Part shown: positions 26,389 through 38,299 of the stretch, piece after piece | Numbering within the stretch: position 1 is the first letter of the stretch | Layout of the letters: every line of letters starts with the position of its first letter | DNA from: Convolutriloba macropyga | Taxonomy: Eukaryota | NCBI RefSeq assembly: GCF_964194025.1 | Contig: NC_134470.1 | Span: 64,046,001 to 64,110,000 of the forward strand | DNA length: 64,000 bases | Reading direction: 5' to 3' | Translations under genes and position numbers: made by a program | The notes under the pieces: model-generated | What the model saw: only the letters and a program-made list of their open reading frames with translations | Told to the model about the DNA's origin: nothing | Database searches by the model: none

Positions 26389-27960
26389 CTACACAATTTT
26401 TGCTAATATGAAAGTAACTACAAATGCATAGTGAGAGGCAAACTCCAAATTAGCCCACACAGAAAAGGTGTGATCAAAATTATATCCTACATTTGACACG
26501 TCACTGTTATCAAAGGGAGCACCAAGGTATATAAGGTGGAACACATTAAACATAGTGAAGCAGAAATTAGCAAAGATCACTAGAATATTTCCAGATTTGT
26601 ATTGATGTTGGCAAGTTTTAGAGCATGGGGAGCTTTGTATGCAGGCTGAGAAAGTCCTGGCGAGCCTATTCCGCAACATGTACTCCGCATAACTTACGAA
26701 TCCGATTGTGAGCAAAACAGCCGACACTTGAAACTTCGCACCATGAAGTAAGGAAGACATAAGGTACACTCCAAAGACAGCTTTGAAAACTCCGTAAGGC
26801 TTCAATTCGTGGAAAACGTATGTTTTGAACCATTCATTCATATACAGATTCCAGTTATTAGCTATAGACCCCATTGATCTGGGAAGTTCCACTTTAGCTG
26901 GATTGACAAAATGAACCGGTACATACTTAAAATGATGTTCTTTTTTGTCTTCGTCCTGGGCATTGCCTCGTTCGTCCGAAATCGAGAACCCAGCAACTGT
27001 TGCCGACATCGAAGCAATATACTGTACAAAATAATGACTTGTCCTGAAACTTTGTGCAACGAAGAACGCCTTCAGCCATTTATTGGCTCCAGGTCCGAGA
27101 ACGAAATTTGTAAAACAGCTTGAGTAAAGCAGCGAAAAAGATGAAAATAGTGCGAATTTGATCGCGTCTCTCATTATGTTTGCAAAGCACTTGAGTGGCA
27201 ACTTCAAAAACGAATTTTGATACATGGTGAAATTAACCCAAGGACCAAATATAACTGTAGCAGGGTGAAACAAATAGCCCATAATCGAATCCAGACTGGG
27301 TTCCGTTTGCAAACGACCCGATGAAAGGTCAAACTCCAGGGATAAGATCTTCATACAAAGAACAATTTGAGGTCCCATTACTTGATGCCACGTTTTTGCA
27401 TCAACGAAGAAGTTACAATACGACAGAAATAGAAAGTAAACAGCTGTGATTATGTATGACCGCTTTTTGTAATCAACATTATCAAACAAAATACACACGG
27501 ATGTATATCCCAAAATAGCTGTGAGCATATAAAACACAGCCGCGCTGGTGTAATAATACAAAACAAAAACCCCAGCAACGACATTTGCGACATTAATTAC
27601 AAACTTATTATTCAGATATTGCGATATAATTCTGCACAAGAGAGATATAAGCAAAATAGGGATAATTATTTGCACGGAGCTTGTGAATACAGGTTTTATA
27701 CATTGGTCGATAACTCCCGGAAAATTGTCAAATAGAACAAAAATCCGGTCATCAAATTCGGGAGCACCGGCTTCGGCTGCTGAAACCAACTGTTCAAACA
27801 GTTCCGGATTGGTTTGCTCCAATTCTTCTAAAAATTCTGGAGTCAGCTGTTCGAGGAAATCAGGGGGTAAATTTTGGAGCATGTTTTCGTCAAAGTATTC
27901 GTTTTGGAAATCTCCATACTCGCCGCCTTCTCCCATGTCAAAATCGTCATAATACTCCAT
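26389..27960 (-). CDS. PORCN: Porcupine, Wnt O-palmitoleoyltransferase (MBOAT), 523 aa, single coding exon
   Basis: Multi-pass hydrophobic protein with GPQIVLCMKILSL, IFGPW, VELPRSM, WNLYMNEWFKTYVF, SSLLHG (catalytic His) and the C-x3-C-x3-C-x-H zinc motif CIQSSPCSKTCQH; ATG at 27960, TTTTCAG acceptor at 27980-27979. Confidence 0.95.
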   Translation of the reverse strand: MEYYDDFDMGEGGEYGDFQNEYFDENMLQNLPPDFLEQLTPEFLEELEQTNPELFEQLVSAAEAGAPEFDDRIFVLFDNFPGVIDQCIKPVFTSSVQIIIPILLISLLCRIISQYLNNKFVINVANVVAGVFVLYYYTSAAVFYMLTAILGYTSVCILFDNVDYKKRSYIITAVYFLFLSYCNFFVDAKTWHQVMGPQIVLCMKILSLEFDLSSGRLQTEPSLDSIMGYLFHPATVIFGPWVNFTMYQNSFLKLPLKCFANIMRDAIKFALFSSFSLLYSSCFTNFVLGPGANKWLKAFFVAQSFRTSHYFVQYIASMSATVAGFSISDERGNAQDEDKKEHHFKYVPVHFVNPAKVELPRSMGSIANNWNLYMNEWFKTYVFHELKPYGVFKAVFGVYLMSSLLHGAKFQVSAVLLTIGFVSYAEYMLRNRLARTFSACIQSSPCSKTCQHQYKSGNILVIFANFCFTMFNVFHLIYLGAPFDNSDVSNVGYNFDHTFSVWANLEFASHYAFVVTFILAKIV

Positions 27961-31239: not shown

Positions 31240-31640
31240 ATGAACTAATGAAAAAAAGCAAATAATAACTTTAAAAAATCGAGAAATTGAAACGCATTAT
31301 TAGGCTCTCAAAAACACTGTGGTATAAATTTCAGAGGTTCAAGTCTCAAAACAGCATCAAGTAAAAATTATTTCTACAAAAAACTAAACTACAACGGAAA
31401 AATCTGGTCTAATTGTACAAAAAAAACGGCTAAAAACGGTTATATATTCGCCATTACATCAAAAAATATATTCAAAGTCGAAAAGTCATCCACTGCACGT
31501 GGCACATGATCAAAAAAACTGCTCCCGCTGAGACATAATTAGTTCACACGGCAATTTTACTCACTTTCACGTTTAGGTCAAAACGCCGTCTGAACGAATA
31601 GTAATTCCGGTGAAAAAAAACCTTAAGAAAACCAATACAC
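31240..31640 (+). repeat. Dispersed repeat; second copy at ~35220-35647
   Basis: Shared blocks AAAACGGCTAAAAACGGTTAT, TTAGTTCACAC, TTTAGGTCAAAAC, CGTCTGAACGAATAGTA, CCTTAAGAAAACCAATAC. Confidence 0.8.
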
Positions 31641-32833
31641 CAATACACGAAGTATAGAGCAATCAAACGTTTGACGCATGAAACATAAACTATGTTAAGG
31701 AAACTTTGTTAAAAATTCCACTTCTAAAAAACTTCTTAATAAGCACTTTTTTTAATTTTATCTTAAATTATTTTATCGCTCTTAATTTGCCAAGATCTTT
31801 TAACACATCGTTAATTTAATGCAAATTTAAACCTTCTCAATACGTGCTGTTTATTCATCTATAATTCATAACATTGGATTGTCTTTAAACTGTATTTTGT
31901 TAAAATGTTCGGTATTTTGTAGTTCATACTCAAAGGAATTAAAAATTCGTCTCTTTGAAAAACGTCTCAGAAATCAATTTCATTATTTTTGCTGAAATTT
32001 TTTGTTATGAATCGTAACGGCTTGGCTGCCATGCCAAATGTTGACAGTTTTAGAAAAACCATTGCACCAAATAAAGAAACATTGAACAAAAGACCGCATT
32101 TTTCTTTTCGCCAAGGATCGGCAAAGCGGCTTAAAATAAATAAATTTTAATTTCCAGTTGCCTCCTCGAACTTTTTGAACTATTGCGTCAAACGAATGCA
32201 TCAAACTACTGAATCAAAATTAGAAGTTGAAAGATTTTTTCGTGGAGATCACAAATCAATTTGCTATTTTAACTGGTGAGGTTGAACCAACGAACCAGAG
32301 GTTGATTTGTTAAAATGACATACACATTTGTTACCAAGTTCAATTACCAGTGTTAGTTTATAGAGCGAACAAGAAATAAGTGCTTTTAGGCAACGATTTA
32401 CACATCGCAGCTCGGATACAAACACGTTTGCACTCCAGCTCTATCGCTTGTTACTCCTGAATTTGCAAAAAATTTTGTTAGAATTAGTGATATTTTCCAA
32501 AACGTTGAAAAATACTTTGCCGTAAAATATCGATAGATCACATTTGTCAACATAGCCACCGTGTTATACCTCCATCCATCATTTCGCAAAATCGGAATGA
32601 AACATTCCACCTATTCTGCACGCAAATATGCGGTTAAAAAGATACAATTAACTCAAAGCAGACTGCAATATAACATATTGGAAAAAAGTAATTTGGAAAA
32701 AGTTTGAAACGGTCAAGTTTTTCAGCGAATTTTTAATGCACTGTGAGAATGCTTCAGAAGACATACGTCAAACACGGGCCTCGAGAATAAACCTTCGCAA
32801 ACAAACAATTTGAAACTAGGAAGCCATCTAATG

Positions 32834-33166
32834 CTATCTCTTTTTGAATCCATATTTCTTCCGCTCGTAGAATAAATCAGTTTTTGCACTTCCGAGATTG
32901 ATAATTTTTGGACATCCATCTCTGTCCTTCTCCAAAATAGTGCACTCTTTACAGTAATATGCGTCACTAACACCAGGACCTCCACAGATGGTGCATCGGC
33001 CCTGATATGAACCATAATTGCATTCATCACAGATTCTGACAAGAGTACATGGACGAACGTAGCTGTCACATATTACACACCTCCCATCGCATTTGTCACA
33101 CAGTCTGCCAATGGCAACACCAGGCTGTTTCCGGCAGAAGATTAGATCAGGATGATGCTTCGCCAT
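32834..33166 (-). CDS. PHF5A: PHD finger-like domain-containing protein 5A (SF3b14b/Rds3), 110 aa, single coding exon
   Basis: [58 protein letters not shown]...[14 protein letters not shown], near identical to known PHF5A; TTTTTCAG acceptor 6 nt before the ATG. Confidence 0.98.
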
Positions 33167-33349
33167 ATCTATCTGAAAAAGATACAAAACTATTATAGCA
33201 ATCTTGGAGGTATAACACCAACATATTTCATCTTGAGGTTGAATACAATGCTTGTTACTAATCTAATTTTTTCAGCATAATTTAAAGGGATCCAATTATG
33301 TGTCCAGATAAAGAAATAAATAATTAGCCATTTAGCTGGTCCTGAGTTT

Positions 33350-36300
33350 TCACCACCCCCTACAAGGTGTGAGAACCTGAGAAACTTTGTTAAACGTTTC
33401 GCCTTCATACACGTAATACTGGCCGTGCATTGCAGCCGTAGCGCAAGAATGCCAAGGATATACTTCCAGTTCTTTACCAATTGGAAACTCCTGGAAATCT
33501 AACTCGGATCCATCGTTCGTTGTTACAATTCCAACTTCCTGAAACTCAGCAAAAATTAATTGACCAAAACCTACGAAACAAAGAATGGTGGCCAGCTAAT
33601 GACTTAAAAGAAGTAAAATAATTGAGACACAGACTATTAACGGCCAATTCTATTTGGTTGAAGTCAATCCTCTTCACGCGAAAAGGTTGCTCTTCAAAGC
33701 TAAACATAGCTGGCAGATTGCCAGAAAATAGCCGCAATAGATTCGCAGATCGGTAGTCTAAAAAAACAGTAAAAAAGACAGACCAAAAAAATTCGTCTTT
33801 TCATTGAAGGTTGATCTGTTATATTTTGATTAAAAATCTGTATAAGTTATTGCTGCCTCTATTAGCTGCTCTCTAATAACATTCAATTAGAGTGACACAC
33901 ACCCATTTGACCTTATCTCTTTGAATTAAAGTAAATAAAAGTCGATTTCAAAGTGAGGAAGTCATTTTTGAGAGTGAGGTAAGTCAAGTGTGACCAAAAA
34001 TTTAATCACGCGCATGAACAAAAAAATTCGCTCCACTAAGAGCGAAAAATGACGTCACACATGCAATTCAGTTGAAATTGCATGAACGAATGAACAAAAA
34101 GCCTGACAAAACTGACAGGGCCATCAATTGCCCTCAGATAATTATTGATTCTAATCTCAAACAGATCGCGAAAGCAAACGGCAGATAAAAACTTTTCAAA
34201 AAAGACAGGAAAGTCAAAATTATTCAAAAAAGAGTGCTCAAACTTAAGAATCAGAGAACCACTACAATTAGATTTCTAATCACGGCAATTGAGACAAAAA
34301 TAATACATGCTTCTTCCTTGTTGTATATATGCTAGACAACATGATCTCATACTAATTCAAAAATTAAATTAATCATAGAAAAACAAAAGCAACAATAATA
34401 TTCAAAGGCAAAAAATCGTCTAAAAACAATACCAAGCCCGGAAGAAAATTGCAATGAATAGTAATAAGTAGAAATGTTGGAATTGACTTTCTAGCAAACT
34501 CCCAGTACTGCCTTATTTTGAATTAAATCAATTGCAAACCGAAGAAACCAAGATCTAAGAAAAAGCTGAATTCATTCAATTTTTTAACAACTGAAAAAAT
34601 CAATATAACGAATATAAAAGTAGGTGCCAGGACAAAACTAGAATGATACAAACGAGAATGTGAAGAATATGGACACAATGTTAGGAACACCGTAACAAAA
34701 AGACCAATTCTTGATTTTTGAAAGTTAAAAATCAAATTTAAAAAAATCAAGAAAAACGAGTACATTTCATTGATCAGCATTCGAGACATAGAAAAGACAA
34801 CGAGTCATTCGAGACAAAAATCCAACTTGCTGAAGAGAATAAAACAAGAAAAAGCAGAATTCAGACATGCAAAACAATGAAACATTTTGCAAAAAAGTGG
34901 TCAAAAAATATTTAAGACTGCATTTATGAAAAAAAATTATCTGTTTTTTCAAAAACTTAACACCAAAAAATGATTGAATTTTTATTGAAACAAAATTAAA
35001 GTCCCTCGTGTTCCCCAAAATACTATTTTTGTAATTAAAAGCAAAATACAAACAAAAAAACTGAAAAAAATTGGCAAAAAAACTACGAAAATCGGATTAG
35101 CAAATGCACAATTTTATGAAACAAAATTACATCGAGGTAGAAAGAGGCATTGAGTATATGAATTATCAAAGAGAAGTTGCCATATTAACTGATTTTTGAC
35201 AAAAACAGCTAAAAGATCCAAAAATGAAGAAATTAATAGAAAAAAGCCAAAACTTAACTAAAAAATCAAGAAATATGTGCCAATTTTGCATTTGAAACGC
35301 AATCTCAGGCTATGCAAAATACTGTGCTATCAATTTCCGGGGTTTATATTTCTTCAACATAGCATCGATTAAAAATTATTTCTACAAAAAACCAAATTAC
35401 AAGCAAAAAAACTAGGCCACTTAGACGAAAAAACGGCTAAAAACGGTTATCTATATGTGCCATTCAGTCAAAAACTACTTTTCAATGTCAAAAAGTCATT
35501 CACTAAACGCAGCGCATGATCAAAAAACTTCTCTCGCTCAGAAAAAATTAGTTCACACTGCAATTTTACTCGCTTTCGCTTTTAGGTCAAAACATCGTCT
35601 GAACGAATAGTACTTCCGGTAAAAAAAAACCTTAAGAAAACCAATACTCCTCTTCGAGTCGTAAAAAAACCAAGAGAAGGCCAATAATAGCCCCAGCTAT
35701 CGCTGTGCGGCTATTAAACAAAAAGATAAATTCATTTTACGACTCTTGGCAACTCGTGGCTGTCTTAGAAGTCTGCTGACCTTGGTCTGAATTGACGGAG
35801 ACCAAAATGATAAACGCAGTTTTTACAGTCTGTCCCATAAAGTTGAAATAACCGAACGTTCGAAAAACTCTAAAACATGAAATTGAGAAAGCCACTTCTT
35901 CCTGGAATTCCATATTATCGGCTTTTTCTAGGTTTTAAATTTGAACTTCGTTCACTAATTTTCGAAATGTTTGCTTATTTCAACTTTATGAAAAACGCTA
36001 TAGCTTATATAAGAACGAAATCTGGTTCAACCAACATTTGCTTTTCATTTACTGCCCAATCATTGTTTCACTCAATGGTCCTCTTTCGAAATAGAAATAC
36101 TCAGGGATCAATCGTCATCTTACTTGAGACATCTTGAGTAGCTTCAGATGAGGGTAGTCTTTGAATCGAGCATAACCATATTTCTGGTAGTATTCGGAAT
36201 TATTAGGCGTTTCTCCCGATAGACCTTCCCATCCACAATCAATCACCATAGTGTTTCTGTCCCAGTAATTCGCAATAACACGGGTCAGAACAGTACCGGA

Positions 36301-37083
36301 GATATGTTCTATCTTGCAAGAACTTAACATAAACTGCTGAGCGTCGTAAAAGACGTAGTTTCCAGGGTGTACCTCATCAACGCCATCGAAGAGATCCTTT
36401 TCGTGAATACTGCAAGACGGCGTGGATCCGATCGACAGAACACTGTTATTAATATTCAACTTTTTCAATTCACTCTTCAAAGCCTTCAAGGCGTTGATAG
36501 ACTGTTTAATTACACGAATTGAGTCAACTTGAGTTTTGGAATGATAAGAACTACCGCAATGCATGTAAAGACCTAGATAATTTATGTTGGATGACGCAGC
36601 AACTTTTTGGATAAACTTTAACGTGGCAGGATCCAAAGCCATCAAGCCTGTCCGCTTATACAAATGGTCAATTTCAACGAGCACATTCCACTTGCCTTCT
36701 CCTGAAGGCGGTTCCTTTTGCAGTGCTCTTAAAATAGTTTCATTTTCAAGGAGCAAAGTAAACTTTATCGCTTTCTGTGTTAGGGCAGCACACTGCGGAA
36801 TTTTATCTGGAGTTATGTGATATGCATAGATAATTTCGTCAAACGGTGGATCTGTAGAGAGCACAAACATTTCTGCTTCGGAAAGGGTAGACACCACAAC
36901 TCTGCGTTTTTCGTTACAATCTGTCATCATCTTTCCCAGTTCAAGAGTTTTATGTGTTTTCATGTGAGGAACTAAATGGATATTCTGACCACGGAAAAAT
37001 TTTGCCATTCTTTTACAATTATCTTCCGTTTTCGCTTTACTTATGATGAAACATGGCGTTCGTATTTCTTTACGAGATAGCAT
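33350..37083 (-). CDS. DSD1: D-serine dehydratase / D-threonine aldolase family (PLP fold type III, Zn-dependent), 382 aa; exons 37083-36124 and 33538-33350
   Basis: TPCF, PHMKTHKT (PLP lysine), RTG, HCGSSY, SIGSTPS, EVHPGNYVFYD in exon 1; phase-0 donor CAA|GTAAGA; exon 2 after TTTCAG reads EVGIVTTNDGSELDFQEFPIGKELEVYPWHSCATAAMHGQYYVYEGETFNKVSQVLTPCRGW* with the HSC zinc ligands. Confidence 0.9.
33701..35718 (+). mobile_element. Second, longer copy of the Helentron-type non-autonomous element, in the DSD1 intron
   Basis: 5' AACATAGCTGGCAGATTGCCAGAAAATAGCCGCAATAG, internal AGTGAGGTAAGTCA (also at ~6365), 3' ATAGCCCCAGCTATCGCTGTGCGGCTATTAAA. Confidence 0.55.
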
Positions 37084-38299
37084 TGCGCAATAAATTAACT
37101 TTCAGCAAAATGTTCAATTGAGGCAATGAGTTCACTCAAACATAACTTCACCTGGTAAATCATTTAAGCTGATTCTGTTGAAGATCTTTGAGGATAAAAG
37201 TTTGATACAAATCTTTGAGCTTGATGAAAGTCTGCATACAAATTTATTTAAAATGGAAATACGATCCACCCAATAGACGGAACCGTTAGTCCCCACTATA
37301 AAACACAGAGCAGCATATGAAAAACTACAAAAACGCATTGTGTACTGCTAGGCTGCGCCAGAGGGTTGAATTAATACTATATTAATTAGGTTTGAAGCCA
37401 TCTCTCCCGCACAACACTACAGGTACAATGAACCTCCGTTACACGTTTAGAACCACTGCAGCCTCTAAGACAGCTGTAGAGTAATTGTCAATTAAAAATT
37501 GATTAAAAAAACAGATGTTTTCGAACATTGCGTTAATCGTCAGGTTTAAAAACTAGATGAAATCATTTACAAAGTATATAAACTTCTCTTTGACTCTAAC
37601 TCTAAGAACAACATTTTATTTACACTTAATACACTAACCAATTGAATTTTTATTCCGGAATTTTTGAAAATCCCGGGTATAATGCTTTCTATTCCTGAAG
37701 GGATTTTGACGTTCATTCTTATCTGTTTTTATTTTTTACATGTTGGGATTTACAAAATTTCGAATTAACATGTATCTTTTTTGAATTTCAAAAGTTAAAT
37801 TTTTGGCTTTCGAACTAATACTTCATTGTCAATTCCTGCCCCGGTACTCATCGCGCGTATTTAATTGCGGTTTCAGCTTCTATGGTCATTAGTTTTTCAA
37901 CTGTGCTGCGTAGGAGAGCAAAACCGTTCTCCGTGAGTAGTTAATATTGCGTGCCAGCAGGTGTCGTCTTTTCTCCGTGTTAATTTTGTTTCTAATTGGT
38001 TTACAGTGCGTTTTGCAGATAACCAAGCGTCTCCCATACAGGAAAACACAAGCGAAACATATTTAATTTCCAAAAAAGTGTAACATTTAAGAATTTTAGT
38101 GCCTCCTAATATCTGTAGGCTTTCATGTGGGCATAACCTTGCGGACGTGTTTAATTTTTTACGTCGAAGAAAACTCTGCGGAATAACGACACTCACAAGC
38201 CCATTTGCTATGGCTTCAAGTCGAGATCGAGTTGATGGGCGAAAATTTCTCCCTTCTATCAACTAAGTGGTGACTCAACTTGGACATATAGGATAAGTC

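What the first reader, a model, noticed from the sequence alone, without database searches (positions are those of the whole stretch)
32834..33538. Candidate operon / spliced-leader trans-splicing: DSD1 ends 176 nt before a splice acceptor at the PHF5A ATG
Seen: DSD1 TGA at 33352-33350, a pyrimidine-rich acceptor (TTTTGTATCTTTTTCAG, AG at 33174-33173), then ATAGAT and the PHF5A ATG. The 176-nt spacer is T-rich on the coding strand and has no AATAAA and no GTRAG donor. It seems too short to hold a 3' UTR, a promoter, a 5' exon and an intron. Established: this layout is typical of downstream operon genes resolved by SL trans-splicing in nematodes, flatworms and tunicates. Inference: PHF5A is produced from a polycistronic DSD1-PHF5A transcript.
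Basis: partly seen in the sequence, partly recalled or inferred. Interest (0 to 1): 0.8.

Follow-up and report, generated by a model that had tools for sequence, protein, structure and literature searches.

The report
Candidate trans-spliced gene pair in acoel
In the acoel worm Convolutriloba macropyga the splicing-factor gene PHF5A sits 183 bases behind a D-serine dehydratase gene and has a leader-type splice acceptor 6 bases before its start codon; it is probably trans-spliced, but no RNA data could be reached to show that the two genes share one transcript.

Summary
The window comes from the acoel Convolutriloba macropyga (GCA_964194025.3).

**Trans-splicing of PHF5A: about 0.85, on indirect evidence.**
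- S. roscoffensis also has an intronless PHF5A with an acceptor exactly 6 nt before the ATG, in flanks that do not otherwise align.
- In 93 SL-headed acoel transcripts from metatranscriptomes, the median distance from SL junction to ATG is 14 nt, and 41 of 93 are 10 nt or less.
- An RNA contig from a third acoel shows the SL joined to the DSD1 orthologue.
- No GTRAG donor lies anywhere between DSD1's own intron donor and the PHF5A acceptor.

**Operon (shared transcript): about 0.5, untested.**
- For: the 177-nt spacer is about as long as a typical acoel 3' tail (median 154 nt). The order DSD1>PHF5A>PORCN is kept in S. roscoffensis.
- Against: the S. roscoffensis spacer is 572 nt. Two more distant acoels lack the adjacency. 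An internal promoter cannot be excluded.
- The four runs I laid on the locus turned out to be DNA, and no RNA run was listed.

If real, this is a new member of a known kind. I found no paper describing operons in acoels. The scan's first readers had already noted similar candidate operons elsewhere in this genome.

The parts
36124..37083 (-). DSD1 (D-serine dehydratase-like) exon 1, 320 codons. The donor GTAAGA starts at 36123.
   Evidence: ORF and Pfam Ala_racemase_N 6.1e-14; sequence; the 382-aa model has the same length as RefSeq XP_075241231.1.
37099..37112 (-). Weak candidate acceptor (cattttgctgaaAG) 15 nt before the DSD1 ATG. It is a possible SL site for DSD1 itself.
   Evidence: Sequence. 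The DSD1 orthologue of another acoel carries the SL just before its ATG (L009). This site fails my strict acceptor definition.
33539..36123 (-). The single DSD1 intron (2.6 kb), filled with very high-copy repeats.
   Evidence: Sequence. Contig word depth is 1e5-1e6 across 33616-35916, against 60-80 on the flanks.
33350..33538 (-). DSD1 exon 2 (62 codons plus TGA at 33352-33350).
   Evidence: Pfam D-ser_dehydrat 1e-07. 74% identical to the spliced RNA contig L009.
33190..33349 (-). Spacer between the DSD1 stop and the PHF5A acceptor tract. It should hold the DSD1 3' UTR. It has no AATAAA, ATTAAA or GTRAG, and it holds a TATAA at 33197-33193.
   Evidence: Single-copy depth and no variant letters in four DNA runs.
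33173..33189 (-). Pyrimidine tract plus AG (TTTTGTATCTTTTTCAG). This is the proposed SL trans-splice acceptor; the exon would start at 33172.
   Evidence: The position (6 nt before the ATG) is conserved in S. roscoffensis.
33167..33172 (-). Six-base genomic 5' UTR (ATAGAT) between the acceptor and the ATG.
   Evidence: 28 of 93 SL-headed acoel transcripts have 6-10 nt here.
32834..33166 (-). PHF5A coding sequence, intronless, 110 codons plus TAG.
   Evidence: Pfam PHF5 1.4e-49. The protein is identical to that of S. roscoffensis.
32732..32737 (-). ATTAAA, the likely PHF5A poly(A) signal, 97 nt after the stop.
26389..27960 (-). PORCN, intronless, the next gene on the same strand, 4.87 kb downstream. 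Its acceptor ttgttttcAG (AG at 27980-27979) lies 18 nt before the ATG.
   Evidence: 70% identical to S. roscoffensis porcupine-like.

Best explanation
The AG at 33174-33173 is most likely a spliced-leader trans-splice acceptor. The acoel SL is published for S. roscoffensis and ends ...TTATTAAATAG. Joined to position 33172, it would give PHF5A mRNA a capped leader of roughly 38 nt (SL plus ATAGAT).

The favoured, but inferred, source of the pre-mRNA is transcription that starts upstream of DSD1 and reads through the 177-nt spacer. DSD1 3'-end formation and SL addition would then resolve a DSD1-PHF5A polycistronic precursor. The same SL would serve both genes, as in flatworms, tunicates and chaetognaths. 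A nematode-style SL2 is not implied.

What is shown: the anatomy, the conserved acceptor position, and the SL on an orthologous DSD1 mRNA. What is inferred: SL addition to PHF5A in this species (about 0.85) and co-transcription with DSD1 (about 0.5 overall, which is the confidence given here).
For: 1. The organism is the acoel Convolutriloba macropyga. SL trans-splicing affects 30.2% of genes in the related S. roscoffensis.
2. L005-L007 are S. roscoffensis. Its PHF5A is also intronless, with cttttAG placed 6 nt before the ATG, while the flanks do not align.
3. Such acceptors lie within 30 nt upstream of only 6% of random ATGs in the window.
4. In 93 SL-headed acoel transcripts from JGI metatranscriptomes, the median SL-to-ATG distance is 14 nt. 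41 of the 93 have 10 nt or less.
5. RNA contig L009 encodes a DSD1 orthologue (64% identity) and starts with 21 nt of the SL 2-8 nt before its ATGs.
6. No GTRAG lies on the gene strand between DSD1's donor at 36123 and the PHF5A acceptor.
7. The 177-nt spacer is about the length of a typical acoel 3' tail (median 154 nt, a lower bound). That leaves little room for a promoter and an outron.
8. It lies under the operational operon thresholds used for other phyla: 250 bp in chaetognaths and 1 kb in Macrostomum, where the mode is about 100 bp.
9. The order and strand DSD1>PHF5A>PORCN are conserved in S. roscoffensis, although DSD1 is only 47% identical and both clusters are flanked by transposon fragments.
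10. The three genes lie within 10.7 kb of a 64-kb window in which no other ORF of 130 aa or more matched a Pfam family.
Against: - There is no RNA evidence for this locus. X1-X4 were DNA runs: depth was flat and no DSD1 intron joint appeared. No RNA run was listed.
- No transcript contig for C. macropyga or S. roscoffensis PHF5A, DSD1 or PORCN was found.
- A direct pattern scan for SL joined to PHF5A in JGI contigs found nothing.
- The C. macropyga SL itself was not seen in this window.
- In S. roscoffensis the DSD1-to-PHF5A spacer is 572 nt and has AATAAA at +192, which leaves about 370 nt that could hold a promoter.
- Two more distant acoels have no PHF5A within about 9 kb behind DSD1.
- A TATAA lies 31 nt before the ATG here, and a TATAAA lies 41 nt before it in S. 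roscoffensis.
- None of the SL-headed contigs was convincingly bicistronic.
Confidence: 0.5

Rival explanations
1. PHF5A is SL trans-spliced at 33173/33172 but is transcribed from its own promoter. That promoter would lie in the spacer, in DSD1's last exon or in the DSD1 intron. The discarded upstream piece is then a private outron, and the closeness to DSD1 is a compact overlap rather than co-transcription.
For: Only a fraction of SL-spliced genes are operonic in other animals: about 40% in Macrostomum, and 18% of genes against about half trans-spliced in chaetognaths. The S. roscoffensis spacer is 572 nt, with a canonical AATAAA at +192. PHF5A is a core housekeeping gene and DSD1 is a metabolic enzyme, so different expression needs are expected (inference). 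The adjacency is absent in two other acoels.
Against: 177 nt would have to hold the DSD1 3' UTR (L009 has 134 nt, and the typical tail is 154 nt or more) together with a promoter and an outron. Such closeness is unexpected by chance in a 1.18-Gb genome (gene-poor window). The adjacency is kept in a second genus.
Confidence: 0.3
2. There is no splicing. A TATA-type promoter in the spacer (TATAA at 33197-33193) starts transcription a few bases before the ATG, and the acceptor-like tract is simply T-rich promoter-proximal sequence.
For: TATAA lies 31 nt before the ATG in C. macropyga, and TATAAA lies 41 nt before it in S. roscoffensis.
Against: The resulting 5' UTR would be only about 0-11 nt, which is poor for scanning initiation (established knowledge). 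TATAA is frequent in sequence that is 70% A+T. A strong YAG acceptor at exactly 6 nt in both species matches the most common geometry of real SL acceptors. PORCN shows the same layout in four species.
Confidence: 0.1
3. The acceptor is used in cis. A non-coding 5' exon of PHF5A lies far upstream, in or beyond DSD1. Alternatively, DSD1's exon-1 donor sometimes skips to it and makes a chimeric transcript.
For: A splice from donor 36123 to 33172 would be in frame in C. macropyga (...CAA|ATA GAT ATG; sequence).
Against: No GTRAG donor other than DSD1's own lies in the 2.95 kb upstream on the gene strand. In S. roscoffensis the same junction reads AAT TGA, which is a stop, so no fusion is conserved. 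The lineage uses an SL on a third of its genes.
Confidence: 0.07

Closest known systems
SL trans-splicing in the acoel Symsagittifera roscoffensis (Martinez et al. 2022, PMC9911081)
   Same: Closely related acoel. The orthologous three-gene cluster is present. PHF5A has the same acceptor-to-ATG distance. The published SL is found unchanged on a DSD1 orthologue's RNA and on 93 metatranscriptome contigs.
   Different: That paper reports the share of trans-spliced genes. Neither the paper nor its preprint contains the words operon, polycistron or (preprint) intergenic. Nothing is published there for C. macropyga or for this locus.
[quoted passage not shown]
   Same: A single SL is used both inside and outside operons. 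Intercistronic distances peak near 100 bp and are inflated by repeat insertions. Conserved housekeeping genes are favoured. This fits the 177-nt spacer here and the repeat-bearing 4.87-kb gap to PORCN.
   Different: Different phylum, and the SL has an independent origin. In Macrostomum, operons were called genome-wide with mapped SL reads and poly(A) reads; here there are none.
Chaetognath and tunicate operons (Paraspadella gotoi, PMC12460157; Ciona)
   Same: Same-strand genes less than 250 bp apart, downstream genes SL-spliced, and no operon-specific leader.
   Different: Those are supported by SL-read counts. Ciona operons typically have almost no intercistronic spacer (from my own knowledge).
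Caenorhabditis elegans SL2 operons
   Same: An intercistronic spacer of about 100-400 nt, with 3'-end formation of the upstream gene followed by trans-splicing of the downstream gene (established knowledge; cites a mode of about 100 bp).
   Different: Nematodes use a dedicated SL2 and a U-rich element. Only one SL is known in acoels, and no such element was identified here.

Membership tests
SL trans-spliced gene (acoel spliced leader) | The organism makes an SL RNA and trans-splices it to mRNAs. | tested here: inconclusive
   Met for relatives: published for S. roscoffensis; SL seen on RNA contig L009 and on 93 JGI transcripts; SL RNA genes with a GTAAGT donor in L057 and L070. For C. macropyga itself there is no SL copy in this window. 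Earlier scan notes say its LINEs carry the published SL, but I did not re-test that on this genome.
SL trans-spliced gene (acoel spliced leader) | A 3' splice acceptor close upstream of the start codon. | tested here: met
   TTTTGTATCTTTTTCAG lies 6 nt before the ATG. Background is 6% per 30 nt. The position is conserved in S. roscoffensis. It falls in the most common class of real SL acceptors.
SL trans-spliced gene (acoel spliced leader) | No upstream cis donor pairs with that acceptor. | tested here: met
   No GTRAG on the gene strand from 36122 to 33173. Weaker, non-consensus donors were not excluded.
SL trans-spliced gene (acoel spliced leader) | cDNA or reads with the non-genomic leader joined at the acceptor. 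| not testable with these tools
   The runs found were DNA. No RNA run was listed. No transcript contig of this gene was found.
SL-resolved eukaryotic operon | Same-strand neighbours with a short intercistronic distance. | tested here: met
   177 nt from stop to acceptor and 183 nt from stop to ATG. This is below the 250-bp and 1-kb thresholds used elsewhere.
SL-resolved eukaryotic operon | A polycistronic precursor: RNA continuous across the spacer. | not testable with these tools
   No RNA data for this species. L009's 134-nt tail ends 28 nt after an ATTAAA, so it is an ordinary 3' end and not read-through.
SL-resolved eukaryotic operon | No independent promoter or TSS for the downstream gene. 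| not testable with these tools
   Needs CAGE, cap-trapping or ATAC data. A TATAA at 33197 is noted.
SL-resolved eukaryotic operon | Adjacency conserved between species beyond the neighbourhood background. | tested here: inconclusive
   Kept in S. roscoffensis, with spacers of 572 and 249 nt. PHF5A>PORCN is kept in metagenome scaffold L013. It is absent in two other acoels, where PORCN follows GrpE and CLPTM1. Only transposon fragments flank the cluster, so background synteny could not be measured.
Nematode SL2-type operon | A specialised second leader and a U-rich element in the intercistronic region. | not tested
   Only one SL is described in acoels. I do not file the locus under this type.

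The most novel reading that the evidence does not exclude
Acoels (Xenacoelomorpha) have SL-resolved operons. DSD1>PHF5A(>PORCN) is one of them and is conserved between Convolutriloba and Symsagittifera. In other acoels PORCN has been recruited behind different same-strand neighbours (GrpE, CLPTM1). That would add another animal phylum in which operons accompany SL trans-splicing, and the operons would tolerate kilobase-scale transposon insertions in their spacers.
Probability: 0.45. Interest if true: 0.55.

Novelty: new member of a known kind. Interest (0 to 1): 0.4.

Why it matters
SL trans-splicing has a patchy spread across animals. In nearly every lineage that has it, operons have followed. 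Acoels sit at a debated, possibly early-branching position among bilaterians, and so far only the share of SL-spliced genes has been published for one species.

Showing that co-oriented, closely spaced pairs such as DSD1-PHF5A are co-transcribed would add a phylum to the list of operon-bearing animals. It would also improve gene-model building in these repeat-rich 1-Gb genomes. In practice, annotators should not search for a 5' exon or a promoter for PHF5A in the spacer. The RNA-seq library that already exists for this species could settle the question in one mapping run.

Tried and rejected
1. **Read laying on X1-X4.** The runs are genomic DNA: depth is a flat 60-80 across exons, intron edges and spacer, and no DSD1 intron joint appears.
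2. **Second run search restricted to library word 'RNA'.** None was listed.
3. **PHF5A protein search and cluster listing.** The protein is too conserved across eukaryotes to pick out acoel transcripts.
4. **L009's 134-nt tail with a 'tttcag' near its end.** I first read this as read-through to a downstream acceptor. I rejected that reading because ATTAAA lies 28 nt before the contig end, which makes it an ordinary poly(A) site.
5. **L012, a PORCN RNA contig.** It starts with only AATAG, the last 5 nt of the SL. That is too short to count, and the matching genome is from a different species (82% identity).
6. **Bicistronic contigs among 93 SL-headed transcripts.** The second ORFs look random and have no acceptor before them.
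7. **Absence of AATAAA as an argument.** Most acoel 3' regions that I checked lack a canonical signal, so this is uninformative.
8. **DSD1 exon 1 to PHF5A in-frame fusion.** It is possible in C. macropyga but is blocked by a TGA in S. roscoffensis, so I rejected it as a conserved product.
9. **Other scans.** The Rfam scan of the window found nothing. The SL was not found in the window with up to 3 mismatches.

Full report
**What is there**

On the minus strand the window holds a two-exon D-serine dehydratase-like gene, DSD1. Exon 1 is 37083-36124 and exon 2 is 33538-33350, with TGA at 33352-33350. A 177-nt spacer follows and ends in TTTTGTATCTTTTTCAG, with AG at 33174-33173. After six more bases (ATAGAT) comes an intronless 110-codon PHF5A, with ATG at 33166 and TAG at 32836-32834. 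Pfam confirms both identities. The 382-aa DSD1 model has the same length as a RefSeq protein. The spacer has no AATAAA, ATTAAA or GTRAG.

**Which organism**

An exact-protein look-up placed the window on OZ077301.1 of GCA_964194025.3. A genome note identifies that assembly as the acoel Convolutriloba macropyga, with a 1.18-Gb genome.

SL trans-splicing is already published for an acoel. In Symsagittifera roscoffensis 30.2% of genes receive the leader GCCTAATTGTTGTGATAAACTTATTAAATAGA. Neither that paper nor its preprint mentions operons. Four literature searches found no paper on operons in acoels or Xenacoelomorpha.

The four runs returned for the locus are DNA. Their depth is a flat 60-80 over exons, spacer and intron edges, and no joint appears across the DSD1 intron. 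A second search restricted to RNA libraries listed none. No transcript contig of the C. macropyga genes exists in the protein collections. Everything below is therefore comparative or statistical.

**Evidence that the acceptor is an SL acceptor**

- Contigs L005-L007 are S. roscoffensis; their PORCN is 100% identical to the NCBI protein. PHF5A there encodes the identical protein at 80% nucleotide identity and is also intronless. It has ttattcttttAG exactly 6 nt before the ATG, in flanks that otherwise do not align.
- In the window, a strict acceptor motif lies within 30 nt upstream of only 6% of ATGs.
- A scan of JGI contigs for the SL core gave 110 hits. Of these, 93 are transcripts that begin with the leader. 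Their median distance from SL junction to ATG is 14 nt. 41 of the 93 have 10 nt or less, and 6-10 nt is the largest class. PHF5A's 6 nt is therefore typical of real acoel SL targets.
- A Logan RNA contig (L009, run ERR1712226) encodes a spliced DSD1 orthologue (64% identity). It starts with 21 nt of the SL just before its ATG. The upstream gene of the pair is thus itself an SL target in at least one acoel.
- On the gene strand no GTRAG occurs between DSD1's own donor (36123) and the PHF5A acceptor. This removes the obvious cis-exon alternative.
- PORCN shows the same ATG-proximal acceptor in C. macropyga, S. roscoffensis, scaffold L013 and L014.

I put SL addition at 33172 at about 0.85.

**Evidence on co-transcription**

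In favour:
- The 177-nt spacer must contain the DSD1 3' UTR. L009's UTR is 134 nt, and the 93 transcripts have a median 3' tail of 154 nt, which is a lower bound. Little room is left for a promoter and an outron.
- The distance is below the cut-offs used to call operons in chaetognaths (250 bp) and in Macrostomum (1 kb, with a mode near 100 bp and repeats inflating spacers).
- The three genes DSD1>PHF5A>PORCN occupy 10.7 kb of a 64-kb window. No other ORF of 130 aa or more in the window matched a Pfam family.
- The same order and strand are kept in S. roscoffensis even though DSD1 is only 47% identical. Only transposon-like fragments flank the cluster in both species.

Against:
- In S. roscoffensis the DSD1-PHF5A spacer is 572 nt and has AATAAA at +192.
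- In two more distant acoels PHF5A is not within 9 kb of DSD1, and PORCN instead follows GrpE and CLPTM1 on the same strand.
- A TATAA or TATAAA lies 31 or 41 nt before the ATG in the two species.
- No SL-headed contig was convincingly bicistronic.
- L009's tail past the DSD1 stop ends 28 nt after an ATTAAA, so it is an ordinary 3' end rather than read-through.

I put the full operon claim at about 0.5. A private promoter with SL addition is the main rival, at about 0.3.

**Comparison and verdict**

The layout works like the single-leader operons of flatworms, tunicates and chaetognaths. Membership in the class 'SL-resolved operon' is met for spacing. It is inconclusive for conservation of the adjacency. 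It is untestable here for the three RNA-level criteria: the leader on the downstream gene, a spanning precursor, and the absence of an internal TSS.

SL trans-splicing in acoels is already known. Operons in acoels appear not to have been described. If real, this locus is a new member of a known kind. First readers of this scan noted many similar candidate operons elsewhere in the same genome, but none of those has been followed up. Other follow-ups reported that the genome's LINEs carry a DNA copy of the SL. I saw the same thing in another acoel's contig (L011). The existing RNA-seq library of this species would settle the question directly.

Noticed in passing
window 33616-35916 (DSD1 intron): Contig word depth reaches 1e5-1e6 in four DNA runs, against 60-80 on the flanks. 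The intron is built from elements present in roughly thousands of copies in the genome. One piece (35292-35650) recurs at 31287-31641, in the PHF5A-PORCN gap, at 81% identity.
   Followed up: partly
window 37070-37497 and 41132-41638: The 5' flank of DSD1, including its ATG and first 14 coding bases, is duplicated about 4 kb upstream on the same strand, at 95% and 84% identity in two blocks. This is either a segmental duplicate or a repeat that supplies the DSD1 start.
   Followed up: no
L011:15539-15570 (minus strand), contig ctg181183 of ERZ25074608: A full DNA copy of the acoel spliced leader sits directly at the head of a LINE-like ORF1/RVT_1 element and is not followed by a GT donor. This fits retrotransposition of an SL-capped LINE RNA. 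Earlier scan notes report the same for C. macropyga.
   Followed up: partly
L057:70-91 and L070:540-561; also L010:4240-4330: In JGI metagenome contigs the leader is followed by GTAAGT, so these are bona fide SL RNA genes of unidentified acoels. L010 holds a variant copy (…AAATG|GAGAAT) followed by a stem-rich stretch with an Sm-like ATTTTAG; it may be an SL RNA pseudogene or a variant.
   Followed up: no
L014:262-11686 and L015:1-13340: In two other acoel genomes PORCN lies behind GrpE (spacers about 870 and 556 nt) and CLPTM1, all on one strand, and in L015 an LSM gene follows. PORCN has a close same-strand upstream neighbour in four of the five species examined, but the neighbour differs.
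   Followed up: partly
window 36123 to 33172: A splice from the DSD1 exon-1 donor to the PHF5A acceptor would be in frame (…CAA|ATA GAT ATG) and would give a DSD1(1-320)-PHF5A chimera. In S. roscoffensis the same junction reads AAT TGA, so the chimera is not conserved.
   Followed up: yes
window 38500-47300 (minus strand): Several reverse-transcriptase-like fragments lie upstream of DSD1. They resemble the RVT_1 ORFs that flank the S. roscoffensis and L011 loci (tblastx). The three-gene cluster is an island in transposon-derived DNA.
   Followed up: partly
L016-L125 (JGI contigs Ga0073937, Ga0073981, Ga0073986, Ga0073941): About 93 marine metatranscriptome contigs begin with the acoel leader. 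In 68 of the 93 the base after …AAATAG is A, which agrees with the published leader ending in …ATAGA. None of the contigs ends in poly(A), and only 10 have AATAAA or ATTAAA in their last 45 nt.
   Followed up: partly
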